Shown here: positions 5,708 to 62,969 of the stretch, piece by piece
How the letters are laid out: every line of letters starts with the position of its first letter
How positions within the stretch are numbered: position 1 is the first letter of the stretch
Virus record (IMG/VR): IMGVR_UViG_3300020154_000003
Span: 1 to 64,000 of that record
Length of the DNA stretch: 64,000 nt
Direction: 5' to 3' (one strand)
The notes under the pieces: generated by a model
Seen by the model: only the letters and a program-made list of their open reading frames with translations
Told to the model about the DNA's origin: nothing
Database searches by the model: none
Made by a program: the position numbers and the translations under genes

Positions 5708-5776
5708 CTTATTCACGCTATTTATTTTCTAATCCTTAATTAATTTTTAATCGTTCCGTACTGTATAAATACTGCT

Positions 5777-7159
5777 TTACGCAGAAAAAGCTTCATCATT
5801 TACAATGGTAAATCCGATAGGAGATTTTACACTAAAAATTGAATTATTTGACAATTTTAACTCTAAAAAATAATCCTGAGGAACTAACCAACTGGTATCC
5901 AACTCGAACTCATACCCTCTGAATGTTCTATTTACTTGAGTAAAGGGAATTATCTCCATATGAGTTCTACCACCTTGTTTAATGTACAATCTATATGAAA
6001 TATCTAACGGCAAATTGTCATCCTGACTACCATATAATTGTTTAATTAATACTTCAATCTTACGCTTGTCACCTCTTTTGAGATATTCGCCAGATTTTAA
6101 ACCGTGGTAGCTAAAATGGAAATTTTCAGGGTTAATAGTGTTCGACAGATCAAAACTGTAATACTTATCAGAATTAATTAAATAAAAATCCTGTGAGATG
6201 ACTTTAATTTTACTGTTCTGAATTATTGTCCATTGATCATTGAAAATAACTGCATCAGGATATACTGAAGAATCAACACTCAACTCTATTTTATAAACTC
6301 CCTTTTTAACTCTTGTGATATTGTCGCCTGTTATTGTTGTCAACACTTCACCTTCATAATCATAAATGGTTACTGCACTAACTGTCACGTCACCAGCACT
6401 ACTATATAAGTAAAGACTATTCGTCTTATCCATGTAGAAGTATTTTCTATCATCCGTAATTACGTCATCGACAATTGTTTCTATGTAAGGTTCAAATACT
6501 GTGTTAGTGTGACGTAAATGGAATGCTACTGCTTGTCTATATAATGTGGTTAATGCTTCAATGGCATCAGTGAATTTAATTCCTAAACCATAATTAGTTT
6601 CACCGCTGAACAGTATTGCATTTACATAATCAGTAACATCAATTGAAAAATCTTCATTTCCTTTAGGAAAAGATTGAGTCCCAATCACTGTTGATCCTGT
6701 ACTGTTGAATGCTCCTTCACTCTCCCATAACTGACCAGTCTTTCCAGAGTACCAGTTACTCGCCATTGGTGTGATACCAAAATTCATTAAGCTTTCATCA
6801 CTATAAAGCAAATCATAACCAGCACCTTCATCCCAATCCTCTGCTAACGTAAATAACTCAAGCTGGAAACTACTTGCTCGTTCAATTGCCTCACTATATG
6901 ATTTTTTACCTAATAAATCAGGTCTGTTAGCAATTGTATTTTTTAAAACTAATTTGTGTGATGTAATTTGAGATTCGGTAATGCCTTCATTGGATATTTT
7001 AGTAGTTAAGTCATCCAAACCTAATTTGAAGATGATTCTACTGACAGATGCATCAGCAGTACCGTAAGAAACTTCTCCAACAGGATTTTGAGAATTGTTA
7101 GATTCATTACCCTCTATAAGCGTATTGTTTTTCTCAAAATATGATCTGAAAATTGACAT
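5777..7159 (-). CDS. Putative virion structural protein
   Basis: 460 aa, beta-rich composition, GTATTTAT motif 16 nt upstream; no catalytic motif recognised. Confidence 0.55.
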   Translation of the reverse strand: MSIFRSYFEKNNTLIEGNESNNSQNPVGEVSYGTADASVSRIIFKLGLDDLTTKISNEGITESQITSHKLVLKNTIANRPDLLGKKSYSEAIERASSFQLELFTLAEDWDEGAGYDLLYSDESLMNFGITPMASNWYSGKTGQLWESEGAFNSTGSTVIGTQSFPKGNEDFSIDVTDYVNAILFSGETNYGLGIKFTDAIEALTTLYRQAVAFHLRHTNTVFEPYIETIVDDVITDDRKYFYMDKTNSLYLYSSAGDVTVSAVTIYDYEGEVLTTITGDNITRVKKGVYKIELSVDSSVYPDAVIFNDQWTIIQNSKIKVISQDFYLINSDKYYSFDLSNTINPENFHFSYHGLKSGEYLKRGDKRKIEVLIKQLYGSQDDNLPLDISYRLYIKQGGRTHMEIIPFTQVNRTFRGYEFELDTSWLVPQDYFLELKLSNNSIFSVKSPIGFTIVNDEAFSA

Positions 7160-7175
7160 CTATATTAGTTTTCTA

Positions 7176-7183
7176 ATAAATAC
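7176..7183 (-). promoter_or_regulatory. Putative late promoter GTATTTAT
   Basis: One of about 15 copies on the sense strand just upstream of structural genes. Confidence 0.6.
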
Positions 7184-7192
7184 TAAAATGGT

Positions 7193-7222
7193 TAAAATAA
7201 AACCGCACCCTTTACGGTGCGG
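7193..7222 (-). terminator. Rho-independent terminator
   Basis: Stem CCGCACC/GGTGCGG (7203-7222) followed by TTTTATTTTA on the minus strand. Confidence 0.75.
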
Positions 7223-7262
7223 AAGTGTTATTTAAGGTTATCTGGTATTCAGAACCTTCCAA

Positions 7263-8014: not shown

Positions 8015-8191
8015 TTAATATTGTTCTCTCAATAATTGCTTACCATCTTTGGTTACAAAAACCTTGTCAACTCTTTCGATCAAACCTTCGCGGTCGCTCA
8101 ATATCATTTTCTTAGCGTTTTTCGCTTTTCTTTTTGAAGAGTCATTCAAGAAATTGTCCAAAGCATTAGTATTTTTTTCTACGTTGTCCAT
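8015..8191 (-). CDS. Small hypothetical late protein (58 aa), missed by the ORF track
   Basis: Hand translation MDNVEKNTNALDNFLNDSSKRKAKNAKKMILSDREGLIERVDKVFVTKDGKQLLREQY; GTATTTAT 14 nt upstream (8206-8213). Confidence 0.65.
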   Translation of the reverse strand: MDNVEKNTNALDNFLNDSSKRKAKNAKKMILSDREGLIERVDKVFVTKDGKQLLREQY

Positions 8192-8212
8192 AGTAATATT
8201 TTCTCATAAATA

Positions 8213-8818
8213 CTATGAAAATAAGAAAACAACAATACTACGCTTTAATAAGCCAAATTCGGGGAATAATTTATAGAACTTTTGGTATTCTGTAGAATCG
8301 TCCAGTAGGTGATTTTTGGACTTAGATACCATTACATTAATGATGTCATCCACATGATGACCTAAATATTCGTAGATAGATAATTTTAACCCACATATAA
8401 CATGGCCCTTGCGATAATATAGTATATCCTTTTTATAAACATACAAATCACCATTGGGTTTGAAGAAGTTATGAAGTTGTTCAACTGTGTATAGGTTGTG
8501 GAAAAATGGGTCGATATTAACATATTTGTATTTAGATATATAATACTCAGGAATCCTTTTTACAAAGTTTTCCAGTCCCTGCGAGTACTGAACAATATCC
8601 TCTTCCGGGGAAAACTCCCAATACCTTTGATTGACCATATTTTTGGTCAAAATATCAGCTTCGCCACCAGTATTTGTACTTTTGAAGTAATTCCAACCGA
8701 CAATTAAGGTGGGTAACTGGTTTCTAACCTCAGAAACGTCCTTGTAGTAATTAAGGAACTCAACTTCTTTATGATTTATCAGCCGTTCGGGAGAAACAAC
8801 GTTACCTATCTTGATCAT
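8213..8818 (-). CDS. Hypothetical protein, last gene of the glycosylation operon
   Basis: 201-aa ORF whose start overlaps the wecB stop codon by 1 nt. Confidence 0.6.
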   Translation of the reverse strand: MIKIGNVVSPERLINHKEVEFLNYYKDVSEVRNQLPTLIVGWNYFKSTNTGGEADILTKNMVNQRYWEFSPEEDIVQYSQGLENFVKRIPEYYISKYKYVNIDPFFHNLYTVEQLHNFFKPNGDLYVYKKDILYYRKGHVICGLKLSIYEYLGHHVDDIINVMVSKSKNHLLDDSTEYQKFYKLFPEFGLLKRSIVVFLFS

Positions 8819-19282: not shown

Positions 19283-22198
19283 TTAAGGTTTAATGGCTTC
19301 AGTGTTAGCATTTGACTGACCACCTGTTTGAGATGAATCAGTTATTTTTGATCCATTATTGGCTTCTATTTGTGCGGATTCAGCGATTCTAGCAGTCTTG
19401 TAAACACCAACAGGATAATATGTCGAATTTGCGTAGTAGTTGAAACTTTCAGCATTCTGTAGAACATCAATGGCAGACTTCAACGATTGTCCACCAATTA
19501 CACGCATAGTAATGCTTATGTCAGCAATCATAAACTGCATACCCATGCCTTCAGGATTCATGTCCCAAGGAGCGTCAGTATAATCAAAATCAATACTATC
19601 AATGATCACCTTCGTGTGAAAGAAATCACCAATTCTCAACACGCATACTGGTGGTCTTCCGAATACTGAATTACGAGCAGCAGGAATACCCTGACTTTCG
19701 GTCGAATCCAATACTGTTGCGTTACCCTGACGTGTACACTGTTGTAAGAATGTTAATCTTCTATGAAAATCTTCGGGTGTCTGCGAATGAAATACTGGTG
19801 ACAGTGTGCGTTTTTCTGCAGCTTCGAATCCAGTATATTCTTTATCGTTAACATTTTTCAAAACAAACAACCCATCGTTGTTTTGGAAGTTTTCAGCTTC
19901 AGCAATTAATCTCTTATTTGCTTCAATCTGTTCAAGAATTTTATTTCTATCGTTTTTCTGTTGTTCAGTTAATTCAACCTCCTTATATCTAACCGCTCCG
20001 TTTCTAACCAGTACTACCTTTGCATTTCTCTCTGGTTTAACATCCGATGCATACGCAAATTCTGCTTGCGCACCTCTGTCTGAACCATTGGTTGAACCTG
20101 ATGCAACTTTAATTACTTTCACACCAGCTTCTTCCAGCGTTTTACCATGTTCAGTTTTAAACTTTGTTTGAATATATTCATACAACGCCTCAACCCTTCT
20201 TCTTGATAAATCTAAATTATATTGATACTGTTTTGTTTTATCCACATATAGTTTCGATGCAGAACCAACAAAATTTAATGTTACTAAGTCCAATTCACCA
20301 GTATTTGGGTTAAGTACTGATTGAACGAAGTCAGTCACTGTAGAATCGAAACCAACATTTAATCCATCATCGTTGGGTTCGTTACCATCGTCAGTACCGT
20401 TTTCATACGAGCCATCAGGATCAACAACATCCACGTCATTAGGGAAATAATACGTAACATATGTTCCAGATTTAATTACTGGTGTCTGTTGAATTTTATT
20501 TGGTGTAATGGTCTGTAATTGTGCCTCAAGCCTAGAATTTTCAACTTTCTTAGCTTCAATGTCAACGTTCTTCAACTCAGAAGCACTTAATCTACCACCG
20601 AAAGCAAAAAATTTAGCAGCCTCATTATGGCTTCTACCTCTAATCTGTGGTGGATAATCGATAATTAATTTAAATCCTAATCTTGCTATACGCTCTGATG
20701 AACTATATGTATATATAGGTTCACCTCTACCGATGAAGGTTGTAGTTTCATGCTTCGCAATCGAACTTTCACTTAATTGGATGCCGTAAGGAGGAAACCA
20801 CATCACTCTCCCCATATTTTCACCTACTTCGCTCAACGGAACTTTTGTTCCGAAGGCATCACCCAAATATCCTTTGCTGTTTAATCTAAATGCAAGGTTT
20901 TCGATACTAAACATCATGTTCCTGTTGTCGATAACATTTTTCTCTTTATCGAAAATTGGATGCATCTTAGGAATCACATATCTATTTATCACCGATTCTT
21001 TAGGCCCATCATAAATGTTGTTACCATTAAATCTGATCGCTTTTTTATAATTGTTGTAAGGGTCGATAATATTTTGCTGTCTTTCAGTACGAACGTTACC
21101 ATCATTGTCTCTTGTAAGTGGCGAACCATTGTACATAGGATTTCCGTCCTTGTCATACCACTTCTTTTTCGTCTGGTCGATAGATGAGTTACCACCTCTG
21201 GCTTGCATCAAGGCTCTGGTATAAGCCAGCATACCCGTTCTAATGCCGAATTTAGAGGCCATCGTATTTGCACCGTCTCTACCCCAAACAACCTGACCAT
21301 TGACGTTATCCACGCCAAAGCCATAGCTATTATCAACAAAGTCAAAATCTTTGTCCTTAGGTTGATTTGGTAAGTTCTGAGCAGTGTTTCCAACGTAGTT
21401 GGTAGTCTTACCCAACCTACTTTTGTGATTTGCACTACCATATTCAAGATTGTTCTGGCCTTCGATACTTTTAAGATCGGGTATTTGATATTCATCAACC
21501 ACCGTCATAGATGCCTCAAACCCGTTAGGGAAATTTTCAGGGTCATCAGTAGGAAATAATACACGCTCATACCATTCACGGCCAGCAGGGATTATTGACA
21601 AACCTTGACCGTTGGTTGTAGATATAAATGCACTATCACTAGGCTTATATAGGTTTTTATTTAAACTTTCATAAAGAAAATTCAACACCCCTTTACCTGT
21701 GTTTCTCACCAACTCGTTACGCATCATTCGGAATTCTTCGTTGGTTCTGGTTGGGCTTAATGGTGAGGTCACTCGTTGATTACCAGCAATTCTTTCAATG
21801 ATATTTTCAACTGTGGTATTATCCTCATCACGAGTAATACGATAATCTACACGTTTTGTAAATAATTTTGTATTTGGATTACCATCAAAAAGATTGTTGA
21901 AATTTATAGATGGTAAACCAGCAGTAAGGGCGTTTTGTGTCACTCTTTGAGCAAATTGCTTACCTAATTGCTCGATTCCGATCTGTGCAATAGGTGTATT
22001 TGGCCCAATCATCCTACCGATAACCGTATTTTTAAGGTCAAAAGACTTGGTTGGGTTGAAAACAGCAGAAATTCCGTTAATAGCCTTAATTAATAACGGG
22101 TTGTCAATCGCATAAGGATCATTTGGAGTGTATAAGTTTCTGGCTACCAAATTTTCCCTTAAATTTTTTAATTCTTGGCTGTCTTTTAATCCGGGCAT
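19283..22198 (-). CDS. Large baseplate / tube-initiator-like virion protein with an OmpA-like domain
   Basis: Tube-like segments (FIGRGEPIYTY; GRPPVCVLRIGDFFHTKVIIDSIDFDY) flank an OmpA_C-like stretch; late motif at 22215-22222. Confidence 0.6.
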   Translation of the reverse strand: MPGLKDSQELKNLRENLVARNLYTPNDPYAIDNPLLIKAINGISAVFNPTKSFDLKNTVIGRMIGPNTPIAQIGIEQLGKQFAQRVTQNALTAGLPSINFNNLFDGNPNTKLFTKRVDYRITRDEDNTTVENIIERIAGNQRVTSPLSPTRTNEEFRMMRNELVRNTGKGVLNFLYESLNKNLYKPSDSAFISTTNGQGLSIIPAGREWYERVLFPTDDPENFPNGFEASMTVVDEYQIPDLKSIEGQNNLEYGSANHKSRLGKTTNYVGNTAQNLPNQPKDKDFDFVDNSYGFGVDNVNGQVVWGRDGANTMASKFGIRTGMLAYTRALMQARGGNSSIDQTKKKWYDKDGNPMYNGSPLTRDNDGNVRTERQQNIIDPYNNYKKAIRFNGNNIYDGPKESVINRYVIPKMHPIFDKEKNVIDNRNMMFSIENLAFRLNSKGYLGDAFGTKVPLSEVGENMGRVMWFPPYGIQLSESSIAKHETTTFIGRGEPIYTYSSSERIARLGFKLIIDYPPQIRGRSHNEAAKFFAFGGRLSASELKNVDIEAKKVENSRLEAQLQTITPNKIQQTPVIKSGTYVTYYFPNDVDVVDPDGSYENGTDDGNEPNDDGLNVGFDSTVTDFVQSVLNPNTGELDLVTLNFVGSASKLYVDKTKQYQYNLDLSRRRVEALYEYIQTKFKTEHGKTLEEAGVKVIKVASGSTNGSDRGAQAEFAYASDVKPERNAKVVLVRNGAVRYKEVELTEQQKNDRNKILEQIEANKRLIAEAENFQNNDGLFVLKNVNDKEYTGFEAAEKRTLSPVFHSQTPEDFHRRLTFLQQCTRQGNATVLDSTESQGIPAARNSVFGRPPVCVLRIGDFFHTKVIIDSIDFDYTDAPWDMNPEGMGMQFMIADISITMRVIGGQSLKSAIDVLQNAESFNYYANSTYYPVGVYKTARIAESAQIEANNGSKITDSSQTGGQSNANTEAIKP

Positions 22199-22214: not shown

Positions 22215-22222
22215 ATAAATAC
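22215..22222 (-). promoter_or_regulatory. Putative late promoter GTATTTAT heading the baseplate + glycosylation operon
   Basis: 16 nt upstream of the ATG at 22198. Confidence 0.6.
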
Positions 22223-22587: not shown

Positions 22588-23046
22588 ATGTTAAAAGTAT
22601 ATACTGATGGTTCTTGTTGGCCAAACACTGGTGAAGGTAATGGAACATATGGTTTTTTAGTTGTTGATAACAATGAAAACGTCATCCACTCGCACATTGA
22701 TGGTCGGGAGAAAACGACAAACAACCGAATGGAATTGCTTGGAATTATCTCGGCATTTAAATACTTAAATGCTAATCACGGAAGTGTATCAAACATAACG
22801 ATTTTTTCTGATTCGCAATATTGCGTAAAAGGATTCAACACTTGGTATTTTGGATGGATAAAATCTGAAACTAAATTAAGTAAAATTAAAAATTTGGATA
22901 TGTGGCATTATCTGCACGGCCTGCGTTCTCCAAACATTGAATTGAAATGGGTAAAAGGTCATGCATCAAATAAATTTAATAACCTTATCGATGAATTGAT
23001 AAGTGAAGAATTTGCGAAACGATATGGAACAAAACCTAAGTACTGA
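22588..23046 (+). CDS. rnhA: Ribonuclease HI
   Basis: YTDGSC, TNNRMEL, SDSQY, N.DMW, WVKGH, N..ID. Confidence 0.95.
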   Translation: MLKVYTDGSCWPNTGEGNGTYGFLVVDNNENVIHSHIDGREKTTNNRMELLGIISAFKYLNANHGSVSNITIFSDSQYCVKGFNTWYFGWIKSETKLSKIKNLDMWHYLHGLRSPNIELKWVKGHASNKFNNLIDELISEEFAKRYGTKPKY

Positions 23047-23332
23047 AAAAATATTTCGAAAGGTATTATTATCTGAAAAATTACCTCCTTTAGATAAATA
23101 TGTTCCCATGATTGATGATCATGATGAAATTATTATGTATAGAAGAATTGAAGTCCCTATACTTGGAAGTAGTAATATGTCAACTTTTTATAATATGCGA
23201 GATTTGGCAGGGGATAATACTCCACATGATAACCATCCGATGATTTATTGGCTTGAAGAAGTAACTATTGATGAGTTACTTACAACTTCCTCGCGGCTGA
23301 AGTACCTTGTTGATGTCTTACGGACTGAATAA
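23003..23332 (+). CDS. Hypothetical protein
   Basis: 109-aa ORF overlapping rnhA and the 3' end of the tape measure gene. Confidence 0.5.
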   Translation: MKNLRNDMEQNLSTEKIFRKVLLSEKLPPLDKYVPMIDDHDEIIMYRRIEVPILGSSNMSTFYNMRDLAGDNTPHDNHPMIYWLEEVTIDELLTTSSRLKYLVDVLRTE

Positions 23333-25793
23333 CTGCTTCCCTACCAATATCGAGAACCTTAACCAATCTTTCACGGTTAATCTCAAGAGTAATATCACTC
23401 TTAATTGAAACATTTTTATCCGCAAACTCAACTTGCAGAGGTTTGCTTAATAATGATTTTAACTCAGCGAACATGCTGTTGGAATCGATCTTAGTATTTG
23501 CAATATTTTTTATTGCACTTTCCACTTTTTCAAATTGTCCTGCATTAGCATTAAGAACGACACCGATGTTTTTGAAAGCATCGCCAACCCTTTCAATATT
23601 TTTAGCTTGTGTTCCGATTGCAAGTATCATTGCTAACGCACCTCCACCACCGATAGCACCTAAAATTCCACCAGCAGCTAATGACATTGTGGCAGCACCA
23701 ATCGCAGCAATACCTCCTGCAATTCCAAGTAATTGTTCACCACTTGTAGACTTCGAAAGATCGGCTAACCCTTTCGACATATATCCGATACCAGCACCAG
23801 CGATACCGATAGCAACGCCAATACCTAAGAGAGCACCAGTTATGATTGCAATACCGACCACAGATGTTTCTGCAGCCTTACCTAAAAGTACCAAGCTTAC
23901 AGCCATTAATGGTACTGCAATGCTAATTCCTATTATGGAAAATTTAAGTGCATCTAATTGTTCGGGATTTAAGTCCTTCAAGCTTTTCGCTAAAAATCCA
24001 AACCCTGCTGCGGCAGCACCAATTCCAATACCTGCACCAGCAGCAGCTAAACCAATTGCTTTAAGATTACCAGCCATTGCGCTACCGCCTTTACCAGCAA
24101 CTTTTTGCATACCTCCACCCATGAGACCGCCACCACCTGCAGGAGATGGTGAACTACCTCCTTTTGATTTAAGCATCCCACCGATACCACTCATCATCGG
24201 GCCAACGGTGTTGAATAACTTACCAGCAGCAAGTAAAGTGATCGCTGCACCACCGATGCCTTTGATCCAGCCTTCACCCATCCAATCCTTTAACTTATTG
24301 ATCTTTTGTAGAACCCAATTAACTCCCTCCAGTACAGGAAGAAGAACAGATTTCATTTCGAGCATAGTATTTTTCATCACTTCCTCGAAATTCTGTGAGT
24401 CAATACCTCTTTGTTCTAAAGTTTTTTGTTCTTGCTTTAAAAGTTTAATATCGGACGTAGCTAACTTTGAAATGTCTTTTTGCGCACCATTAACCATCGC
24501 AAAGAACTTACCAGTCTTACTATCGAATTTTGCAATACCTTCGATGTACTCTTGCTCATCCTTAGTTAAGTTCAAACCTAAAGTTTGCTTTTTCATGGCC
24601 TGAACCTGTGCGACTCTACGGGCAGATTCTGCTAAATTTTCATATGACACTCCGAGAGCATCAGCAGCCTGACGTAATCTGTCCTGATCCTGTGCAGTTA
24701 CTGCGAAATCGAATCCGTCTTCAGTTTTACGCATCGTAGCCATACCCTTTGTTAGTTGGGTCAACTTCTTAGCATATTCTGCAGGATCATTTCTTGAAAG
24801 GAATAGTAATTCAAATGGGTCTGACTTTGCAAACTCACCACCTAACACATTTAATTGTGAAGCCATCTCAATAGCACCTTCCAAGCTTCTGGCCATCTTT
24901 GCACTATTGATCGAATCATTAATATCTAGCTTGAATTTCTCTGAGTATTCACTCATTTTAGCCATACCTTTAATACCATCTCTGAAAGAGAACGTGTTAA
25001 GGGTTTTGAAGTTCTGACTTATATTTTTTAATACTTTGGTTGCATTAATACCTAGTCGCTCTGATGAGTCAACAACTCCTTGTACAAATTTTTGACTTCT
25101 TTCAATACTGACACCTAAATTATCAAATTGTCCAACAAGTTTTCCAGCTTGATCAACACCTAAGGCTGTACCCTTTCCAATACTTGAAACTAACTTGAAT
25201 TCTTTCTCAGAAAGTGCTACTGTTCTACTTGTTTCTTCTGAATATGCTGCTTGAGCCTTTGCTAATTCAGCAATAGAAACACCCAATCTTTGAGAATACG
25301 TTGCAGCATTCTGCATGTTTTGTCTTAAGTCGTCTGCCTTACCTGCTGACAACCCTAATTCAAGCGTTACACCTCTGATTGCTTTATCGGCATCCATGAT
25401 GTAACCAGTCATCGCACCAAAACCAAAGTTTCTATCTCCAAAACTGGCAATGGAGTTCTTTATATCTCCAACGACTTTTTCTTGTTTTCTATAAGTTTTT
25501 AGTTGGTTTTCTAGTTGCTTATCAAGACCTTTTGCAGCAATGATTTGCTGTTTTAGATTAGCTAAAGCAGTTTGAGATAGTTTACCCCTACCGCTAACGT
25601 GTCGATTTAATCTATTCTCTAACTTTTCAAGTTCTCTGGCGACTGATAGTCTTTCAAGTTCAGTATTGGCAATATTTTTCTGGAAACTACTCTCAAAGCC
25701 TAAGCTTTCGTTAATCTCCTTCATTATCCGTGCCTTTTCCTCCAACGCATTAGTTGATAGTGGAGTGCCTGAAACTTTTTGCTTTTTAGCCAT
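23280..25793 (-). CDS. Tail tape measure protein
   Basis: 837 aa, helical/coiled-coil, Gly/Ala-rich hydrophobic C-terminal half, downstream of tail chaperone genes, late motif at 25809-25816. Confidence 0.85.
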   Translation of the reverse strand: MAKKQKVSGTPLSTNALEEKARIMKEINESLGFESSFQKNIANTELERLSVARELEKLENRLNRHVSGRGKLSQTALANLKQQIIAAKGLDKQLENQLKTYRKQEKVVGDIKNSIASFGDRNFGFGAMTGYIMDADKAIRGVTLELGLSAGKADDLRQNMQNAATYSQRLGVSIAELAKAQAAYSEETSRTVALSEKEFKLVSSIGKGTALGVDQAGKLVGQFDNLGVSIERSQKFVQGVVDSSERLGINATKVLKNISQNFKTLNTFSFRDGIKGMAKMSEYSEKFKLDINDSINSAKMARSLEGAIEMASQLNVLGGEFAKSDPFELLFLSRNDPAEYAKKLTQLTKGMATMRKTEDGFDFAVTAQDQDRLRQAADALGVSYENLAESARRVAQVQAMKKQTLGLNLTKDEQEYIEGIAKFDSKTGKFFAMVNGAQKDISKLATSDIKLLKQEQKTLEQRGIDSQNFEEVMKNTMLEMKSVLLPVLEGVNWVLQKINKLKDWMGEGWIKGIGGAAITLLAAGKLFNTVGPMMSGIGGMLKSKGGSSPSPAGGGGLMGGGMQKVAGKGGSAMAGNLKAIGLAAAGAGIGIGAAAAGFGFLAKSLKDLNPEQLDALKFSIIGISIAVPLMAVSLVLLGKAAETSVVGIAIITGALLGIGVAIGIAGAGIGYMSKGLADLSKSTSGEQLLGIAGGIAAIGAATMSLAAGGILGAIGGGGALAMILAIGTQAKNIERVGDAFKNIGVVLNANAGQFEKVESAIKNIANTKIDSNSMFAELKSLLSKPLQVEFADKNVSIKSDITLEINRERLVKVLDIGREAVIQSVRHQQGTSAARKL

Positions 25794-25819
25794 TTAAACT
25801 CGTTTCAGATAAATACCTA

Positions 25820-27010: not shown

Positions 27011-27125
27011 AATTATAATTTTTTATTATTCTTTATAATTAAATACAGTGTTTTTGAAATTTTTCTCTAAAAAATCAAGATTTCCCTGACTTTCCTGTAT
27101 AATACAGTAGGAGAATATTTTTTTA

Positions 27126-31399: not shown

Positions 31400-32173
31400 A
31401 TGGCCAAAAAGAGTGTTAAGTTAAAAGATAATTATTTCGGTGAGATAGAAGAAATGGCTGTTATTGCATATAATAATGCAAAATCAATAGAAGAAAAACA
31501 TAGGATATACAACAGTATACTTAAGAAGCCTTTTGAAAAGATGGCTGAAATTGTGTACAAAAGGTATCGCTCAAGGGATAATAAGGGTGGATATGAAATA
31601 GAAGACATCATATCCAACGCCTTGGCTCATCTGATCGAGAATATGCATAAATATGACCCTAACCGAATTAATAAAAACGGTGTAAAAACAAAGGCATATA
31701 GTTATTATCAAACTGTAATTCATAACTACTATAAAGATCATGGTAGGAATAGTTACAAAGAAATGATTAATAATCTTGCGTTCGAAGATCATTTCGATGA
31801 AATAGAATCCAGAGAGGAAAATATGTATGAGATTGATGCAGTTAATGAGGCTGAAATGAATGAACAATTAATTGAATTAATTGTTGAGAAGTTCAGGCAT
31901 AGAATCGACACAGACACAAGCCTTAAGAAGAATGAAATAATTGTCGGTGAAGCAATCATCAATGTTCTAAAAAATTGGCACAGTCTATTCATGGAGGAAA
32001 CTGCTATAGGTAATTATAATAAGAAAATATCCAACAATTTCGCAAAAAATAAGATATTATTCTTCCTTAAAGAAATTACAAATCTTTCAACTAAGGAGAT
32101 ACGATCTTCAATGAAACAGTATAAAGACCTTTATTTTTTGGAAAAAAACCTATTCTTCAAGGAAGAATCCTAA
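31400..32173 (+). CDS. Sigma-70 family factor, T4 gp55-like (candidate late sigma)
   Basis: Region-2-like segment EDIISNALAHLIENMHKYDP...KAYSYYQTVIHN; no obvious region-4 HTH. Confidence 0.7.
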   Translation: MAKKSVKLKDNYFGEIEEMAVIAYNNAKSIEEKHRIYNSILKKPFEKMAEIVYKRYRSRDNKGGYEIEDIISNALAHLIENMHKYDPNRINKNGVKTKAYSYYQTVIHNYYKDHGRNSYKEMINNLAFEDHFDEIESREENMYEIDAVNEAEMNEQLIELIVEKFRHRIDTDTSLKKNEIIVGEAIINVLKNWHSLFMEETAIGNYNKKISNNFAKNKILFFLKEITNLSTKEIRSSMKQYKDLYFLEKNLFFKEES

Positions 32174-32212
32174 ATTTTCGCCCATCTACTATTTATAGTT
32201 AAAAATAACGGT

Positions 32213-36542: not shown

Positions 36543-36601
36543 GATTCCCTTAATTTAGTATTTATATATGAAATAAGCTGAATTTTGTATATTTTAGGGT
36601 A

Positions 36602-38204: not shown

Positions 38205-38304
38205 TTTTCTTATATTTTTTTAAATAATTTTATCTCGTTTCTTGTAAATACTTAAATCTTGATATTTGTCTATATTTCAGACTAAATCATTTTCTAATAA
38301 ATAC

Positions 38305-41601: not shown

Positions 41602-41652
41602 ATAAATACTATTCTTTCCGTCAAAATCAATATTTTTCGACATTGTATTTAT
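41602..41652. promoter_or_regulatory. Back-to-back divergent late promoters (ATAAATAC 41602-41609; GTATTTAT 41645-41652)
   Basis: The motif appears once on each strand, each pointing into a structural gene. Confidence 0.6.
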
Positions 41653-43859: not shown

Positions 43860-44360
43860 TTATTTTAATGTGAATGTCATGACAACCTTCTCAACGTCTT
43901 GAAGCCGCATACCCGAATTAACTTGTACGGTCTTCTTACTTAAATCTTTTGCTGGTGTTATGATCTCGAATTCCCATCCATTACTTGTGGTGACCAGTAA
44001 CTTTCCGTTGGTTTCCTTCACTTCATATGTTGATTCTACAGTTTTCGATTGACAATTTAATATTTGTGATGCTTTTGCACCTGCAGCAAATTTAAAGTCA
44101 ATATCTTCAAGGTTGGCTTTTACTGCTTGAGGAAAGCCTGTTTCATCACAACCTCCATTGAAGGTGTAATCAACGGAATTATCGGTAACTACAATGGATT
44201 GAAGTTCCCATGTTCCAATAATCCCTTCTTTCACCAATTCCAGATTGGTTTTAGTAGGTTCTTTTGGTTGCGGGTCTTCCGACTCATCTCCACACGAAGT
44301 GAAAGACAGGGCTACAACGGCCAAAACCATTGTAAAAAGGCTGAATTTAAGGTTTTTCAT
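43860..44360 (-). CDS. Bacteroidota-type lipoprotein, lipocalin-like
   Basis: Signal peptide II MKNLKFSLFTMVLAVVALSFTS-C, acidic GDESED after Cys, then IIGTWELQS lipocalin-like start. Confidence 0.75.
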   Translation of the reverse strand: MKNLKFSLFTMVLAVVALSFTSCGDESEDPQPKEPTKTNLELVKEGIIGTWELQSIVVTDNSVDYTFNGGCDETGFPQAVKANLEDIDFKFAAGAKASQILNCQSKTVESTYEVKETNGKLLVTTSNGWEFEIITPAKDLSKKTVQVNSGMRLQDVEKVVMTFTLK

Positions 44361-44460
44361 AATATTAAAGTTTATTTAAGTGTCTGTTAATCAATTATAC
44401 GTAAATAAGTTAAAAATGTTTTGGTTTATTGAAAAAATCATTTATTAGCTATTTATACGT

Positions 44461-45603
44461 ATGAATGAGCCAATTCAGATTCAGTTAGGAAGTAGTAGAA
44501 GTGTAAACAGTATAAATGTTGACGAATACGTAAATATAGGTCTTCAAAGTAATGAAGTCACGATTTTACCATATAGTCAAACCTCAGTTATAAATGTGGC
44601 TGAAATATTTGATAACGAAAGACAGGCGAGTTTAAATTATAGAATATATGGTGACGTGGATTTTTTGAGTGTTGTTAATGGATTGTTAAAAACTTATACA
44701 AAAGTCTCTGATTTTTTCACAAGGCCATTAATAGGATCGGAACAGCTTGGGCTAACACGGAATCTTTTGAATTGTTTTGATATTTATCTTTGTAAATTAT
44801 CAACTGGTCATACTTCGGGTGCATCGTCATTATATAATACAAGATACGAAATTTTAACAAATCTATCTGACATTGAACTTTACAATTCAGGTTACGGTAA
44901 GAATATCTTCAACGATCAAAAGTATTCCTTTAATTTTAATATAGACGTTGATGTTACTGATATGTGGGACAGTTTCGGTAAACCGATAATGAATCTTTAT
45001 CTGTTCTTTAATTTTAAGCCTGTGATTGAAAAAGGAGAAACAGTTTCAAAAAAATTCTTCATACCTTCTGCTCCAGATCAACCAATAACGTATCAAGTTT
45101 ATAGTAAAGGTGACGTTGTAGATGGTGATTTGGTTTTTTATGAAAAATCGAATTTTGAAGAAGTTCTCATTGAAAGGCAAGAATATTTTGTCACTTTCCC
45201 TTGTACCGATGTGGGCATAAACGTCTTACAATTTAAATATTATCCTTTTGTTCCAGTAAAGTTAAGAGATTTTTCAGATGTTATTGTGAGTGCCAATATT
45301 AGTGGAACTAGTATAAACGATACTGAAATACCTTCATATGCAGTGAAAATCGATAATGATGGTAATTATATTTGGAAAAACATTTTAGAAAATGGATATA
45401 TTGACCCCATCTCAAACTTGGGTGTTAATCATCCCTTTGTTAACAACACACACTATGTATTTACTAATGTAATACTGGATTTAGTACCTGATTTAGACAA
45501 CTCATTTACTCAAACTGCATTTACTAACATTAAGTTTGGCCCGAATACTTTACTTAACAGCAAGCCAATAACTTCACTTAACAACCTTGGGACAAAATGT
45601 TAA
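44461..45603 (+). CDS. Putative virion structural protein
   Basis: 380 aa; CTATTTAT immediately upstream. Confidence 0.5.
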   Translation: MNEPIQIQLGSSRSVNSINVDEYVNIGLQSNEVTILPYSQTSVINVAEIFDNERQASLNYRIYGDVDFLSVVNGLLKTYTKVSDFFTRPLIGSEQLGLTRNLLNCFDIYLCKLSTGHTSGASSLYNTRYEILTNLSDIELYNSGYGKNIFNDQKYSFNFNIDVDVTDMWDSFGKPIMNLYLFFNFKPVIEKGETVSKKFFIPSAPDQPITYQVYSKGDVVDGDLVFYEKSNFEEVLIERQEYFVTFPCTDVGINVLQFKYYPFVPVKLRDFSDVIVSANISGTSINDTEIPSYAVKIDNDGNYIWKNILENGYIDPISNLGVNHPFVNNTHYVFTNVILDLVPDLDNSFTQTAFTNIKFGPNTLLNSKPITSLNNLGTKC

Positions 45604-46331: not shown

Positions 46332-46363
46332 GAAAGTTTTAGTATTTATTATAAAGTATTTTT

Positions 46364-47134
46364 ATGGAAAAAAAGTCACTAAATGAGCATATTGATAGAA
46401 TGATAAAAATTTCGGAATACAAAATTCCTGAAACCAAAAGAACTTTGGTTGAAATGTCGTTACCTATCGGTGAAGTGGCCCCAATGGGACAACAACCACA
46501 GCAACAAAATCCTGCTCAGGTAGATCAAGCCTTCGAAAGAGAGGTTGATGCAGCACTTAATCAAATAATGCAGACTTTACCACAAGAATTACAGAAAATA
46601 GCGACCACACAAGGTGATAAAGACGGTCAAATTGAACCAATAGGTCAGGAAAATCAACAACCTGCTGCCCAACCACAAGGTAATCCTGTAGCTGAAGCTG
46701 AATTAAATGAAGCAGTGGGAGCACTGATCGCAGGTGGAGCCTTGGCATTGCCCGCAATAGGTAATTTAGTAGGAAAAGCGATCTCTTTTTTAGGTAAAAG
46801 AGCCGATAGTCAAGTAATTCAAAAGATGGGTGATCGTGTAACCCATGCTGCGGAGCATTTACATCATAAATATGAATCTATTATTGATAGAATTCTCAGT
46901 CCCTTAACGAAAAATCTCGATCCAAACACCAGAAAGTTAATTAACAAAGGCGTTTTTTACGCGATTGTTGCTGCTTTAGGTGGTGCTGGTGCAATTGGAG
47001 CCACACACGCAGTACAAGGAGGTAACATTGGCCTTGCTGCCGTTGAAGGTGGATTGACAGGAGTGAAAGCCAGCGAGTTAGTTGCTGCAGCCCGCACAAT
47101 TATCCCAAGAATTTTGAGCCAAGTAGTTGCGTAA
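46364..47134 (+). CDS. Late protein with Gln/Pro linker and Gly/Ala-rich hydrophobic helices; candidate internal/ejected protein
   Basis: GTATTTAT 14 nt upstream; leader shared with ORF 7263..8003. Confidence 0.5.
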   Translation: MEKKSLNEHIDRMIKISEYKIPETKRTLVEMSLPIGEVAPMGQQPQQQNPAQVDQAFEREVDAALNQIMQTLPQELQKIATTQGDKDGQIEPIGQENQQPAAQPQGNPVAEAELNEAVGALIAGGALALPAIGNLVGKAISFLGKRADSQVIQKMGDRVTHAAEHLHHKYESIIDRILSPLTKNLDPNTRKLINKGVFYAIVAALGGAGAIGATHAVQGGNIGLAAVEGGLTGVKASELVAAARTIIPRILSQVVA

Positions 47135-53028: not shown

Positions 53029-53880
53029 TTAACTGAAGGTTTCATCAAATGTCGAGTCGAACGTATTTCCACCTGTGGCTTTAGTTTGGTTGACATCTAA
53101 TTTCATATTATTTTTACTTACTGCAAGACCAACTGATAATTTTGGTACTCTTGAAGTTTTAACTATTTCAAAGTTTTTTTCATTTTGTACAAAAGCAAGC
53201 ACCTTCAACTGGTATACATTAACGTACATTCTATCTCCCTTAATATCCTGAATGTGTTCTTCCTCTAATGTATCACAATGAATTGCGAAAGGATTACCTT
53301 TAATCCAGCAATATGATTGTCTGCTTGAAAAAATATCCAATACTAATTCATCAAGAAGATTCATGTCGTTCTGATATTTTGAGAATAAGCGAACTTCGTA
53401 TGTCATATCGACTGAAGTTGGTTGTGGTACTTTAAATCTAAGATTAACTACTTGTCCATCATCAAAGATGGGAACATCTAAATATGTGAATCTTTTATGT
53501 TGGGCAACCGTATATTTCTTATTACCCATTCTCGTCCCAAACTCCCTTTTAATTCTTCTAACCGTCATGTACGGGGTGAGAACGTTTTGATCATTATCAG
53601 TGAATTGCCATGTTTTTGCGAATTCACCCCATCTTTCCTTTGTCAAATAAAATACTGGAACGTCTTTTCCATCAAGTATTAATTTCATATCTTTGTTTTT
53701 GACAAAATCAAACATTGCAGCATCTATATCCCTAAGTTTGATAGTTCTTGGTAAATAGTTTGTCTTTTGATTGGTTTTGAGCATAAGTTCCTCAATACGG
53801 TCTAAACCGTATTTTAAGTACTCATTTCCTACTTTTATAGGGTTCAAAACCAGATCAATCTTCTTTTTTGGAAGTGCCAT
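53029..53880 (-). CDS. Tail completion / sheath stabiliser protein (T4 gp15-like)
   Basis: Position among tail genes; TPYMTVRR, P.SVDMTYEV pattern; late motif at 53893-53900. Confidence 0.6.
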   Translation of the reverse strand: MALPKKKIDLVLNPIKVGNEYLKYGLDRIEELMLKTNQKTNYLPRTIKLRDIDAAMFDFVKNKDMKLILDGKDVPVFYLTKERWGEFAKTWQFTDNDQNVLTPYMTVRRIKREFGTRMGNKKYTVAQHKRFTYLDVPIFDDGQVVNLRFKVPQPTSVDMTYEVRLFSKYQNDMNLLDELVLDIFSSRQSYCWIKGNPFAIHCDTLEEEHIQDIKGDRMYVNVYQLKVLAFVQNEKNFEIVKTSRVPKLSVGLAVSKNNMKLDVNQTKATGGNTFDSTFDETFS

Positions 53881-53908
53881 GATAATTTTATTATAAATAC
53901 GAATAGAT

Positions 53909-60986: not shown

Positions 60987-61003
60987 AAAAATGAAAACTT
61001 ACA

Positions 61004-61330
61004 ATGTTAGAACTAATATTGGTTGGCGTAATTCTATGCTGCGTTGTATGTTTATATATCGTTAAAAGGAAAAAAGATAATGCTGAGGCAAAAATTGAAT
61101 CCTTATTAGGTGAAATTGAAACTTTAAAAAAGTTAATTCCATCTGATAAGGATTTACAATTTCTTGAATTTACTGTGGATATGTATATCAAGTATGCAAA
61201 GGACTTTGGTATCCATTCGGAAACACAACATGAAAAAATTGTTACAGAGTTGACCAGAGTTCGAGACCAGTACTTGATTAAGAGTTCTTCATCAATCCAA
61301 CAACATCCTCATGAACAGGAGTCGCAGTAA
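61004..61330 (+). CDS. Hypothetical membrane-anchored coiled-coil protein
   Basis: N-terminal hydrophobic helix followed by a basic cluster and heptads. Confidence 0.5.
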   Translation: MLELILVGVILCCVVCLYIVKRKKDNAEAKIESLLGEIETLKKLIPSDKDLQFLEFTVDMYIKYAKDFGIHSETQHEKIVTELTRVRDQYLIKSSSSIQQHPHEQESQ

Positions 61331-61817
61331 TTTTCTTCCAATAAGGTTTAAATCCACCACGGCTTCTGGCAGTAGTATCTGAAACATTGTCTGCTGACGT
61401 AATTTCGAAAAACCTTTCCTTTTCTCCAGAGAAGTTAAATGAAACGTAATTACCTGCATTCATGTCAACACCTTTTTCGGTTAATTCCTCAAGATAAATT
61501 CCAAAAACCATATCGCCAGAATCTTCTCGCGCAATACCATCTTCACCGAAGTATTTTCTTTCACCTTCTTCAACGTCAAGCATGACCGCTAACTCCACAA
61601 CTGGTAGGAATTTCTTATCTGCAGGCTTTGCTTCACCATAAAGATCGTCAACATTAGATTTAAGTACATCAACACGATAATATTTAACTCGGAAGGGAGA
61701 ATCAGTATTCAAATACTCACGACCATACATAACGTCAAGATTAAAACTGTTCTCACTCATGAACAATCCGTATCTTTGTTCTTCCAGATCAATATTTTGC
61801 TTTTTCTTTTTAGCCAT
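61278..61817 (-). CDS. Neck / head closure protein (T4 gp14-like)
   Basis: DDLYGE...F, E..KYFGE.G motifs; adjacent to the neck gene. Confidence 0.65.
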   Translation of the reverse strand: MAKKKKQNIDLEEQRYGLFMSENSFNLDVMYGREYLNTDSPFRVKYYRVDVLKSNVDDLYGEAKPADKKFLPVVELAVMLDVEEGERKYFGEDGIAREDSGDMVFGIYLEELTEKGVDMNAGNYVSFNFSGEKERFFEITSADNVSDTTARSRGGFKPYWKKITATPVHEDVVGLMKNS

Positions 61818-61818
61818 C

Positions 61819-62937
61819 TTATGCGGTCATAATAGGGAACATTGGAGGTTGGAAACCTCTCTCTTTATTTACGTTTGCAGCAATTTCTGCTCTATCTCTA
61901 GTCAATTGAACAAGCGACAATTTATTCAAGGATTCAGTGATCTTAAGAATGGTCTCATCTTTCAACTGCTTGCCTTCTTCCAATAAATGTCTGTAATCCA
62001 TCGTCAATTCCTTCTGCGTTGCACCAACTTCACCACTGTAAAAACCTCTAATTCCACCGATTGCCATTTTACATTTAGCAATAAATAAATCTCTAATCTG
62101 AACTTTGGCAACACTGTTTAATTTTTCCCATTTAATGATGTCGATGGGAGCATCGCTAGGAAGTTTCACAACATCATTATTGGCTTCCAAGCACTTATCT
62201 CTTCCGATATTGTTGGTATTGTAGTAAAAATACCAGACTTTGGTTCCTTCCATCGATTTACTGAAACCGTTGCTGATTTCATTTCTTTCTCCCGGAACAG
62301 GATACAAATACAACAGTTTGGTTCCATTAGGGCCACCTGTTACACGGTATGTTAATTCAGACTGAAGAATACGTCTTTTTGTGCCCCTATCCTGCGCTGA
62401 AAGCAACAATGAGTATGTGGGCTGTGCGTATTGGGCTGGTCTACCTAAATAACTCCATCCGAAGCTATTGGCGTTCCAATTCGACAATGCGAAAGGATCG
62501 ACCAAACCACTGTCTATTTGAGGCGGGGTAGTCCAGAGCACTTCGTTGATCTCTCTATTGGCTGGAATTATGTAAACTTGGGTGTTTGCTGAGATCGTGA
62601 CATAATCCCTATGGAGAACCCAAGAATCGCCAGATGGAGCGTTCATTCCAAGGCCAACCTGCTTAGAGTAGGCGTAGGTGAAACTCTCCATAAAGTCCGT
62701 AGATTTCGTTGTATAGGCTTCAAAGAAATTGGAGCCATCGACCTGTAAACCTTGCAGGGATACCCACTGCTGCTCTATGAGCCAGTTGTTTACGATCATG
62801 CTGTAGTCCTCAACCACCATTTCAAGATAGGAGTCAAGTTGTTCAGTTTTAAGTTCAAAGGGGCGCAATGGATACCCCAATTCGTGTTTAACTTGTTTGT
62901 ATAATTTTTCTTTATCTACCTTTGAAATCAGTGACAT
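61819..62937 (-). CDS. Neck protein (T4 gp13-like head-tail adaptor)
   Basis: LGYPLRPFEL..EQL, ELTMDY..LLEEG, C-terminal PP.FP; late motif at 62953-62960. Confidence 0.7.
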   Translation of the reverse strand: MSLISKVDKEKLYKQVKHELGYPLRPFELKTEQLDSYLEMVVEDYSMIVNNWLIEQQWVSLQGLQVDGSNFFEAYTTKSTDFMESFTYAYSKQVGLGMNAPSGDSWVLHRDYVTISANTQVYIIPANREINEVLWTTPPQIDSGLVDPFALSNWNANSFGWSYLGRPAQYAQPTYSLLLSAQDRGTKRRILQSELTYRVTGGPNGTKLLYLYPVPGERNEISNGFSKSMEGTKVWYFYYNTNNIGRDKCLEANNDVVKLPSDAPIDIIKWEKLNSVAKVQIRDLFIAKCKMAIGGIRGFYSGEVGATQKELTMDYRHLLEEGKQLKDETILKITESLNKLSLVQLTRDRAEIAANVNKERGFQPPMFPIMTA

Positions 62938-62969
62938 AATTCGTTATTTTACATAAATACTAAAAAAGT

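What the first reader, a model, noticed from the sequence alone, without database searches (positions are those of the whole stretch)
5765..62960. Recurrent putative late promoter GTATTTAT, the reverse complement of the T4 late element, plus a gp55-like sigma
Seen: [G/C]TATTTA[T/A/C] occurs on the sense strand upstream of nearly every structural gene or operon. Copies are at 7176, 8206, 22215, 25809, 27039, 32189, 36558, 38244, 38297, 41602, 41645, 44449, 46342, 53893 and 62953 (also 5765). Eight lie 12-16 nt before the ATG, and orientation always follows the gene strand. Established: T4 gp55 recognises TATAAATA on the non-template strand. Here the sense strand carries TATTTAT, the opposite orientation. 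Inference: the sigma-like ORF 31400..32173 reads a different late promoter.
Basis: partly seen in the sequence, partly recalled or inferred. Interest (0 to 1): 0.65.

Follow-up and report, generated by a model that had tools for sequence, protein, structure and literature searches.

The report
Late promoter of Flavobacteria-type giant phages
An eight-base signal, GTATTTAT, sits just in front of the particle-building genes of this 366-kb soil phage and its relatives, and is most likely a late promoter read by a phage-made sigma factor resembling that of phage T4, a system not yet described for phages of Flavobacterium-like bacteria.

Summary
The window is the first 64 kb of a 366-kb phage genome from a soil metagenome. 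GTATTTAT is the commonest 8-mer upstream of genes genome-wide: 47 sense copies in 19 kb of upstream gaps, against 1.6 expected. Orientation is 38:2 in co-directional gaps and there are no copies in convergent gaps. No -35-like element accompanies it. An A lies 5 nt downstream in 45 of 49 sites, and about seven genes have their ATG exactly there. This places the likely start site there and the motif at -12 to -5.

Identified downstream genes are terminase, portal, proteases, sheath, tube and baseplate hub. The motif is kept upstream of orthologous genes in three metagenomic relatives. Cultured Flavobacterium phage immuto carries it as (C/A)TATTTAT.

ORF 31400-32173 has a sigma region-2 fold whose most complete low-rmsd match is T4 gp55. 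A model docks it on Flavobacterium beta-prime clamp helices. However, it is not a gp55 family member by sequence, and it has an extra C-terminal domain. The genome also encodes two ECF sigmas with their own promoter classes.

The "reverse complement" idea is a red herring: TATTTATA matches TATAAATA at 6 of 8 positions in the same orientation. I rate it a new variant of a known kind. The sigma-promoter link is inferred, not shown.

The parts
31400..32173 (+). Candidate late sigma factor (257 aa): an N-terminal sigma region-2 domain (about residues 11-141) plus a conserved C-terminal domain of unassigned fold
   Evidence: Sigma70_r2 at 19.5 bits and TIGR02937 at 28.4 bits, both below cut-off. 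More than 560 metagenomic homologues. AF2 model matched to gp55 7d7d_F at Z 10.5 and to many sigma-2 domains. Docking on Flavobacterium beta-prime clamp helices scored 0.66 against controls of 0.00.
27075..27103 (+). Bipartite ECF-type promoter candidate (AAG-N16-TGTA, class B-like) heading the PhoH-to-sigma operon 27126-32173; not a GTATTTAT promoter
   Evidence: The block TCAAGAT-N-(C/T)GTA(A/T)A is conserved in four phages (coordinates). It resembles class B sites elsewhere in the genome.
7176..7183 (-). GTATTTAT, 16 nt before the ATG of gene 5777-7159; preceded by a terminator-like hairpin
8206..8213 (-). GTATTTAT, 14 nt before the ATG of small ORF 8015-8191
22215..22222 (-). GTATTTAT, 16 nt before the ATG of the 971-aa gene 19283-22198, which probably heads the leftward gene string running down to about 8213
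25809..25816 (-). GTATTTAT, 15 nt before the ATG of the 837-aa gene 23280-25793; follows a hairpin and T-run. The motif is kept in three relatives
27039..27046 (-). GTATTTAA variant, 28 nt before the baseplate hub gene 26060-27010; relatives have GTATTTAT here
32189..32196 (+). CTATTTAT, 16 nt before gene 32213-32587, directly downstream of the sigma gene; relatives carry CTATTTAT or GTATTTAT here and immuto TATTTAT
36558..36565 (+). GTATTTAT, 36 nt before the ClpP-like prohead protease gene 36602-37327
   Evidence: A diverged strain keeps CAGTATTTATATG in otherwise different flanks (table 7).
38244..38251 (-). GTATTTAC variant, 39 nt before the tail tube gene 37716-38204
38297..38304 (-). GTATTTAT, 92 nt before the tail tube gene (a second, upstream copy)
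41602..41609 (-). GTATTTAT, 55 nt before the tail sheath gene 38823-41546
41645..41652 (+). GTATTTAT, 22 nt before the 712-aa gene 41675-43813 (divergent from the sheath promoter)
44449..44456 (+). CTATTTAT, exactly 4 nt before the ATG of 44461-45603 (leaderless class)
46342..46349 (+). GTATTTAT, 14 nt before gene 46364-47134
53893..53900 (-). GTATTTAT, 12 nt before gene 53029-53880, which heads the string 53880 to 48071
62953..62960 (-). GTATTTAT, 15 nt before gene 61819-62937
5765..5772 (-). GTATTTAT, 122 nt before gene 4371-5642; weakest assignment, because another motif (ATATATGTTTACG at 5675-5687) lies closer to the gene

Best explanation
GTATTTAT (fuller consensus a-GTATTTAT-w-w-w-a-A-A) is the single-element late promoter of this phage and of a large clade of mostly uncultivated myoviruses of Flavobacteriia-type hosts.

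It lies on the non-template strand at about -12 to -5. That is where Flavobacterium sigma-A reads its '-7 box' and roughly where T4 gp55 reads TATAAATA. No -35 element accompanies it. Transcription most likely starts at the conserved A five nucleotides downstream. This gives very short leaders, mostly about 7-13 nt, and a subset of leaderless mRNAs whose AUG begins at +1.

The host core RNA polymerase is directed to these sites by the phage protein encoded at 31400-32173. This is a divergent sigma whose N-terminal region-2 domain binds the beta-prime clamp helices and recognises the melted -10-like element, as gp55 does in T4.

The sigma gene itself sits in an operon headed by an ECF-type promoter. 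The phage also encodes two ECF sigmas with matching bipartite promoter classes. The programme therefore looks like a sigma cascade that ends in the late class.

Shown: the motif, its statistics, position, orientation, conservation and gene class; the sigma fold; the absence of a recognisable phage RNA polymerase. Inferred: the start site, the pairing of this sigma with this motif, and the order of the cascade.
For: Motif statistics and orientation.

Position matrix of 49 sites: no conserved -35 region, A at motif position 13 in 45 of 49 and at position 14 in 40 of 49. The spacer to the ATG peaks at 11-17 nt. A separate class has exactly 4 nt: six GTATTTAT sites in the genome, the CTATTTAT copy at 44449 in the window and one site in immuto.

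Downstream genes:
- terminase large subunit
- portal, a gp21-type protease and a protein with a lysin domain
- ClpP-type protease, tail tube and baseplate hub
- sheath
- a scaffold-like gene followed by the gp23-type capsid gene

Of the 61 non-coding copies, 53 lie in the two genome arms (0-120 kb and 280-366 kb). Only 8 lie in the central 160 kb.

Conservation:
- Three relatives have a sigma 55-61% identical and 26-33% GC. They keep GTATTTAT upstream of orthologous genes, with 3, 5 and 6 sense and 0 antisense copies, against about 0.13 expected.
- Flavobacterium phage immuto has a 23%-identical sigma homologue, gp118, next to a PhoH-like gene. It has (C/A)TATTTAT(A/T) before terminase, portal, sheath, tail spike and other genes: 13 sense and 0 antisense copies, against 0.55 expected.

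Sigma protein. The complex model places residues 64-80 and 120-131 on beta-prime residues 274-319 of F. johnsoniae RpoC. Score 0.66, best control 0.00. The mark was reached by 58 of 80 solved complexes and 2 of 110 mismatched pairs. Runs agree in at least 65% of contacts and the partner pLDDT is at least 72.

No beta or beta-prime domain was found in the genome. The search for a T7-type polymerase was uninformative.

The two ECF sigmas have their own AAC...CGT-type promoter classes. The promoter of the sigma operon is of that type and is conserved.

The Flavobacterium -7 box occupies -12 to -5 (PMC9723704). gp55 recognises A-12, A-9 and A-8 through its region-2 domain and needs no -35 element (PMC7892883).
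Against: - No transcript 5' ends are available. The metatranscriptome-labelled runs hold only contigs of related strains and say nothing about start sites.
- The sigma-motif pairing is by exclusion and co-occurrence only.
- The protein is not detectably gp55-like in sequence.
- Its conserved C-terminal half has no clear fold match. It could be a -35- or DNA-binding module whose target I did not detect.
- With the start at motif position 13, the element sits 2 nt closer to +1 than TATAAATA does in T4.
- A few motif copies precede non-structural genes: ribonucleotide reductase at 108 nt, a glycosyltransferase, and a 1405-aa protein with tRNA nucleotidyltransferase and RNA-ligase domains. Most downstream proteins have no annotation.
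- My gene calls are crude longest-ORF calls.
- The docking pass may reflect memory of solved sigma-core complexes.
Confidence: 0.6

Rival explanations
1. The motif is a genuine late promoter, but it is read by another factor: the host primary sigma (perhaps altered by a phage protein), or one of the two phage ECF sigmas. ORF 31400 would then do something else.
For: - The element occupies exactly the -12 to -5 slot of the Flavobacterium sigma-A box (PMC9723704).
- Shifted by one base, TATTTATw matches TAnnTTTG at 4 of its 6 specified positions.
- Two other sigma genes exist in the genome.
- No direct link between ORF 31400 and the motif was tested.
Against: - There is no -33 TTTG partner.
- The G at position 1 and the A at position 7 are essentially invariant, yet they do not fit TAnnTTTG.
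- The ECF sigmas have region 4 and well-matched bipartite AAC...CGT promoter classes of their own.
- The motif and the 31400 family co-occur in all four relatives examined, including a 23%-identical cultured one.
Confidence: 0.17
2. The motif is not a promoter core. It is a binding site for a phage regulator, or an RNA-level signal such as a translation enhancer for Shine-Dalgarno-less mRNAs or a processing site.
For: - Most copies lie 11-17 nt from the ATG.
- The host group lacks Shine-Dalgarno sequences; only 48 of 587 genes here have an SD-like 4-mer (PMC6847099, abstract as listed).
- AT-rich leaders favour initiation in that group.
Against: - Spacing to the ATG ranges from 4 to more than 90 nt, whereas the conserved A stays fixed 5 nt after the motif.
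- The motif marks only the heads of gene strings, not every gene.
- None occur in convergent gaps.
- With 4-17 nt to the ATG there is no room for another -10-type element downstream, and nothing is conserved upstream.
- Some copies directly follow terminator-like hairpins.
Confidence: 0.1
3. The motif is the promoter of a phage-encoded RNA polymerase too divergent to detect, as in phiKZ- or AR9-type jumbo phages. The 31400 protein would be that polymerase's specificity subunit.
For: - The genome has jumbo size.
- The model also resembles a chain of the AR9 non-virion polymerase holoenzyme (7s01_A, Z 9.0).
- Short promoters close to the start site are typical of such enzymes.
Against: - No beta or beta-prime Pfam domain at E <= 1 in six-frame searches, with positive controls in all 14 reference genomes.
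- The virion genes are T4-like: gp23, gp20-type portal, gp19, T4_baseplate and T4-type terminase.
- The 160-kb relative immuto is annotated without any RNA polymerase in the roughly 90 kb inspected.
- The protein docks on a host-type beta-prime.
Confidence: 0.05

Closest known systems
Bacteriophage T4 late transcription (gp55 with the TATAAATA late promoter, co-activator gp33 and sliding clamp gp45)
   Same: - A single -10-like AT-rich 8-mer on the non-template strand, with no -35 element, in front of virion genes.
- A small phage sigma whose region-2 domain is the recognition module; gp55 is the most complete low-rmsd structural match.
- 6 of 8 motif positions are identical in the same orientation, including the two adenines that gp55 buries in deep pockets (PMC7892883).
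- The phage belongs to the T4-like structural superfamily.
   Different: - The two central bases are TT instead of AA, and a conserved G precedes the motif.
- The element appears to sit 2 nt closer to the start site.
- The sigma is 257 aa against 185 aa, with an extra conserved C-terminal domain.
- There is no significant sequence similarity to gp55.
- No gp45-like clamp was found, and gp33 was not searched for.
- Many leaders are extremely short or absent.
Bacteroidota primary sigma-A promoters (-7 box TAnnTTTG at -12 to -5, with -33 TTTG)
   Same: - The same slot relative to the inferred start site (PMC9723704).
- A T-rich core beginning with TA.
- The same translation context without Shine-Dalgarno sequences.
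   Different: - No -33 element.
- The invariant bases (G1, A7, T8) do not fit TAnnTTTG.
- Restricted to the phage's late and structural gene strings.
Phage sigma cascades (Bacillus phage SPO1 gp28 then gp33/34; ECF-like sigmas of phiEco32- and 7-11-type phages)
   Same: Several phage-encoded sigmas, each with its own promoter class, redirect the host core polymerase. The late sigma gene lies behind a promoter of an earlier class.
   Different: - Two ECF-type sigmas are combined with a region-2-only-type late sigma.
- The likely host is a member of the Bacteroidota.
- The order of the cascade is inferred and untested.

Membership tests
T4 gp55 late-sigma family | Detectable sequence homology to gp55 | tested here: not met
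   hhalign of the 30-sequence family profile against T4 gp55: E 0.27, probability under 1%. The PHROGs scan hits only a generic sigma family at 4e-4. A shared N-terminal K-x-K-x-N-Y...A-(I/V)-I pattern is visible but is anecdotal.
T4 gp55 late-sigma family | Sigma region-2 fold that binds the beta-prime clamp helices | tested here: met
   VIA-align gives gp55 (7d7d_F) Z 10.5, rmsd 3.1 A over 117 of 137 residues. Many sigma-2 domains score Z 7-9.5. Chain identity was confirmed. The docking model contacts beta-prime residues 274-319, score 0.66 against 0.00 for the best control. These are predictions only.
T4 gp55 late-sigma family | No region 4; the body ends in a helix-loop-helix and a flexible clamp-binding tail | tested here: inconclusive
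   No Sigma70_r4 hit. However, there is a conserved 115-residue C-terminal domain (helix, helix, beta-hairpin, helix, helix). Folded alone (pLDDT 80) its best match is Z 6.0, with sigma-4 and MarR-like rows at Z 5-5.6. The C-terminal DLYFLEK..FF..EE loosely recalls gp55's SLDFLYEAND, but it is predicted helical and is not kept in immuto.
T4 gp55 late-sigma family | Partners gp45 sliding clamp and gp33 co-activator encoded by the phage | tested here: not met
   No match to Pfam gp45-slide_C or DNA_PPF, or to the T4 gp45 protein. These searches are weak negatives. gp33 was not searched for.
T4-type late promoter | A single -10-like element without a -35 element, upstream of late (virion) genes | tested here: met
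   Position matrix of 49 sites. Downstream gene identities.
T4-type late promoter | Consensus TATAAATA | tested here: not met
   The consensus is GTATTTAT(A/T). TATAAATA itself occurs on the sense strand only as the reverse complement of oppositely oriented copies.
Bacteroidota sigma-A promoter | TAnnTTTG at -12 to -5 together with TTTG near -33 | tested here: not met
   The position is the same, but the sequence does not fit and nothing is conserved near -33 (PMC9723704).
ECF sigma factors (for ORF 31400) | Regions 2 and 4 both present; bipartite AAC / CGT promoter | tested here: not met
   Only region 2 is detected and the score is below the family cut-off. The two other phage sigmas meet both criteria.
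Experimentally defined promoter | A mapped transcription start and dependence on the factor | not testable with these tools
   Only contigs of related strains were available from RNA-labelled runs.

The most novel reading that the evidence does not exclude
A very large, almost wholly uncultivated clade of big phages of Flavobacteriia-type hosts (more than 560 sigma homologues, on contigs up to 366 kb) runs its late genes with its own sigma family. That family is distinct from gp55 or only anciently related to it. Its new C-terminal domain would replace the gp33/gp45 clamp-activation apparatus of T4. It would read a GTATTTAT element placed so close to the start that many late mRNAs are leaderless. 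It would sit at the end of a three-sigma cascade with two ECF sigmas.
Probability: 0.35. Interest if true: 0.72.

Novelty: new variant of a known kind. Interest (0 to 1): 0.6.

Why it matters
Transcription in Bacteroidota is unusual, with an odd primary sigma and no Shine-Dalgarno sequences. Almost nothing is known about how their phages time gene expression.

This finding gives three things:
- a precise, testable late-promoter consensus;
- a candidate sigma family for a widespread group of soil and aquatic phages;
- a cultured member, Flavobacterium phage immuto, on which it can be tested.

It would provide a natural comparison for the T4 gp55 paradigm: the same logic, a different motif, an extra domain and perhaps no clamp. 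The motif could mark late genes in hundreds of metagenomic phage genomes whose proteins have no annotation. It could also supply orthogonal promoter-sigma parts for genetic tools in Flavobacteria.

Tried and rejected
- Megablast of 20 kb against the phage collection found no match.
- The search for related loci with the single sigma protein found nothing. Relatives were reached through the word search and contig look-ups instead. One look-up returned no DNA.
- Sequence search of the sigma profile against the PDB gave only chance hits.
- Foldseek against the PDB gave nothing at E <= 0.001, although the weak rows are mostly sigma factors.
- hhalign against T4 gp55 was not significant.
- The C-terminal domain folded alone gave no convincing fold match.
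- Searches for a gp45 clamp were empty.
- The T7-type RNA polymerase search was uninformative, because it rang in no control genome.
- Public reads: only one DNA run holds the stretch. The metatranscriptome-labelled runs hold contigs of 90-95% similar strains that cover genes and spacers alike, so there is no evidence on starts or expression.
- Terminator immediately upstream as a general feature: only 4 of 55 motifs have a perfect-stem hairpin plus T-run, against 11 of 585 controls. This is suggestive only.
- Literature searches for the motif, for Flavobacterium phage late promoters and for immuto found no description of this element.
- I rejected the 'reverse-complement of T4' reading because the direct-orientation alignment is closer to the mechanism.

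Full report
**What the window is.** The 64-kb window is the first part of a single 366,038-bp virus record (36% GC). CheckV rates it complete. It comes from a soil metagenome.

It is a myovirus with T4-type virion genes:
- sheath, tube, T4-type baseplate hub and ClpP-like protease in the window;
- gp20-type portal, gp21-type protease, T4-type large terminase and a gp23-type capsid protein just beyond it.

It carries 54 tRNA genes. Only 48 of my 587 crude ORF calls have a Shine-Dalgarno-like 4-mer. The only cultured phages with a homologue of the sigma-like ORF infect Flavobacterium. The host is therefore probably a member of the Bacteroidota; this is an inference.

**Check of the observation.** Every listed copy exists on the strand of the gene it precedes, and eight have 12-16 nt to the ATG. 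In the window GTATTTAT occurs 14 times against 5.5 +/- 2.6 expected.

In the whole genome the signal is unambiguous:
- 62 of 87 copies lie in the 8% of non-coding sequence.
- It is the most frequent 8-mer in the 60 nt upstream of genes, 48 sense against 10 antisense.
- There are 47 sense copies in 19 kb of upstream gaps, against 1.6 +/- 1.2 in 500 dinucleotide shuffles.
- Co-directional gaps hold 38 sense and 2 antisense copies. Convergent gaps hold none.
- Only CTATTTAT is an enriched variant.

**Anatomy.** Aligning 49 sites gives a-GTATTTAT-w-w-w-a-A-A, with nothing conserved where a -35 element would lie.

The A at motif position 13 is present in 45 of 49 sites and the A at position 14 in 40 of 49. 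The distance to the ATG peaks at 11-17 nt. A distinct set of genes has exactly 4 nt, so that the A of the ATG is position 13. One gene of phage immuto shows the same spacing.

The simplest reading is that transcription starts at position 13. The motif then lies at -12 to -5, most leaders are about 7-13 nt, and a subset of mRNAs is leaderless. In Flavobacterium psychrophilum the sigma-A box TAnnTTTG occupies -12 to -5, the median leader is 24 nt, and 5.5% of mRNAs are leaderless (PMC9723704). The phage element therefore sits in the slot where a region-2 domain reads DNA in this host group. Its sequence does not fit the host consensus, and it lacks the -33 partner.

**Which genes.** Where the downstream gene can be named, it is a virion or packaging gene: terminase, portal, two proteases, a scaffold-like gene followed by the capsid gene, sheath, tube, baseplate hub and a protein with a lysin domain.

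Of the 61 non-coding copies, 53 lie in the two genome arms that hold these genes. Only 8 lie in the central 160 kb.

There are exceptions: a copy 108 nt before ribonucleotide reductase, one before a glycosyltransferase, and one before a 1405-aa RNA-repair-like protein. Most downstream proteins have no annotation. 'Late' is thus an inference from gene class.

**Conservation.** The sigma-like ORF has more than 560 homologues of about 250 aa in metagenomes, on contigs of up to 366 kb. Three syntenic relatives (sigma 55-61% identical, 26-33% GC) keep GTATTTAT upstream of the orthologous 837-aa gene, hub, tube, sheath, 712-aa gene and the gene after the sigma, while the flanks have diverged. Counts are 3, 5 and 6 sense and 0 antisense copies, against about 0.13 expected.

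In Flavobacterium phage immuto the 23%-identical homologue is gp118. It lies, as here, just downstream of a PhoH-like gene and before baseplate genes. There (C/A)TATTTAT(A/T) precedes terminase, portal, sheath, tail spike and others: 13 sense and 0 antisense copies, against 0.55 expected.

**The sigma.** ORF 31400-32173 gives only sub-threshold sigma hits, covering region 2 and no region 4. An AlphaFold model (pLDDT 78) has an N-terminal domain whose structural neighbours are almost all sigma factors. The most complete low-rmsd match is T4 gp55 (Z 10.5, rmsd 3.1 A, 117 residues), tied on Z with others.

A complex model with the first 450 residues of F. johnsoniae beta-prime places residues 64-80 and 120-131 of the protein on beta-prime residues 274-319, the clamp helices. 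The score is 0.66 against a best control of 0.00. That mark was reached by 58 of 80 solved complexes and 2 of 110 mismatched pairs. The runs agree in at least 65% of contacts and the partner pLDDT is at least 72. The pass may reflect memory of solved sigma-core complexes.

Sequence comparison with gp55 is not significant. The highly conserved C-terminal 115 residues have no convincing fold match. No gp45-type clamp was found. No beta or beta-prime domain is detectable, and the search for a T7-type polymerase was uninformative. The host core polymerase is therefore the likely enzyme.

**Other sigmas and promoter classes.** The genome has two genuine ECF sigmas, at 175356-175919 and 300487-301059. 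It also has two bipartite promoter classes of ECF type:
- Class A: GTAACCTT-N(about 15)-CCGTTAA, clustered at 158-176 kb and 203-208 kb.
- Class B: AAAC(A/T)TTT-N-TTTACGTATAAT.

The operon that contains the late sigma (27126-32173) is headed by a class-B-like element, AAG-N16-(C/T)GTA, that is conserved in all four phages. It is not headed by GTATTTAT. By architecture and by exclusion, the region-2-only sigma pairs with the -35-less motif, and a cascade is plausible. This pairing is the main untested step. How the very first genes are transcribed is unclear, because host-type promoters are few.

**The 'reverse complement' idea.** TATTTATA is indeed the reverse complement of TATAAATA. The template strand of the T4 P23 scaffold even reads GAGTATTTATAC (PMC7892883). 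But promoters are read directionally on the non-template strand.

In the same orientation the two motifs share 6 of 8 positions. The adenines that gp55 inserts into deep pockets, at -12 and -8, coincide with the two A's here. The base in the shallow pocket, at -9, is one of the two that differ (PMC7892883). The relation is better described as a two-base variant of a T4-type -10-like element than as an inverted one.

**Verdict.** The motif is real, directional, conserved and tied to virion genes; my confidence that it is a promoter element is about 0.9. That the 31400 protein reads it with host core polymerase is the best explanation (about 0.6), but it is inferred. I found no description of this element in the searched literature.

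Noticed in passing
G000 158-176 kb and 203-208 kb (outside the window); sigma genes at G000 175356-175919 (+) and 300487-301059 (-): Two genuine ECF sigma genes, plus two ECF-type bipartite promoter classes. Class A is GTAACCTT-N(about 15)-CCGTTAAtAtAC, placed before strings of small genes. Class B is aAAC(a/t)TTT-N-TTTACGTATAAT. The first ECF gene has a class-A site just upstream. Which sigma reads which class, and what transcribes the first genes, is open.
   Followed up: partly
window 44394-44408 (-), 5675-5687 (-), 37360-37372 (+), 38325-38337 (+): Class-B-type or related TTTACG-containing elements upstream of non-structural-looking genes inside the window. TTATTTACGTATAAT lies before 43860-44360. 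ATATATGTTTACG lies before 4371-5642 and 37404-37625. TATAATATTTACG lies before 38359-38763.
   Followed up: partly
window 26069-26081 (-), at the junction of the baseplate hub gene 26060-27010 and ORF 25845-26042: A T9-C4 run at the very end of the hub gene, conserved in all three relatives (T9 + C4 in each). The frame of the downstream 65-aa ORF is open back to this run in the window and, checked by hand, in one relative (L006). A programmed frameshift or transcriptional slippage could therefore fuse the two products. The run also encodes a conserved ...DFFFPF C-terminus, which may be the whole explanation.
   Followed up: partly
G000 89-126 kb (outside the window); tRNA(CUA) at 123540-123613 and 125586-125659: 54 tRNA genes by ARAGORN, including two with anticodon CTA (amber suppressor type, labelled Pyl by the program). 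The window's genes read through normally with the standard code. I did not examine TAG usage.
   Followed up: no
window 22588-23046 (+); L005 1364-1813; L005 17651-18271; L006 16078-16788: Small genes on the opposite strand are inserted between late operons. In relatives the equivalent places hold HNH, GIY-YIG and LAGLIDADG homing-endonuclease genes. The window ORF was not tested.
   Followed up: no
window 32213-32587 (+) and its counterparts (L005 10808-11194, L007 10860-11255, immuto gp117): A gene of about 125 aa always lies directly after the sigma gene and is always headed by the late motif. It has no family hit. It could be a structural protein or a partner of the sigma.
   Followed up: no
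L031 (immuto 58-78 kb): The early-looking region of phage immuto carries a different, highly repeated upstream element, TATATTTAGGTATCAATAATTAAAAC. It may be its early promoter class. Papers listed report 7-deazaguanine DNA modification in this phage, which could matter for recognition of G-containing motifs.
   Followed up: no
window 41721-41728 (-) and 43434-43441 (+): Two exact GTATTTAT copies inside the coding sequence of 41675-43813. They may be chance copies or internal promoters.
   Followed up: no
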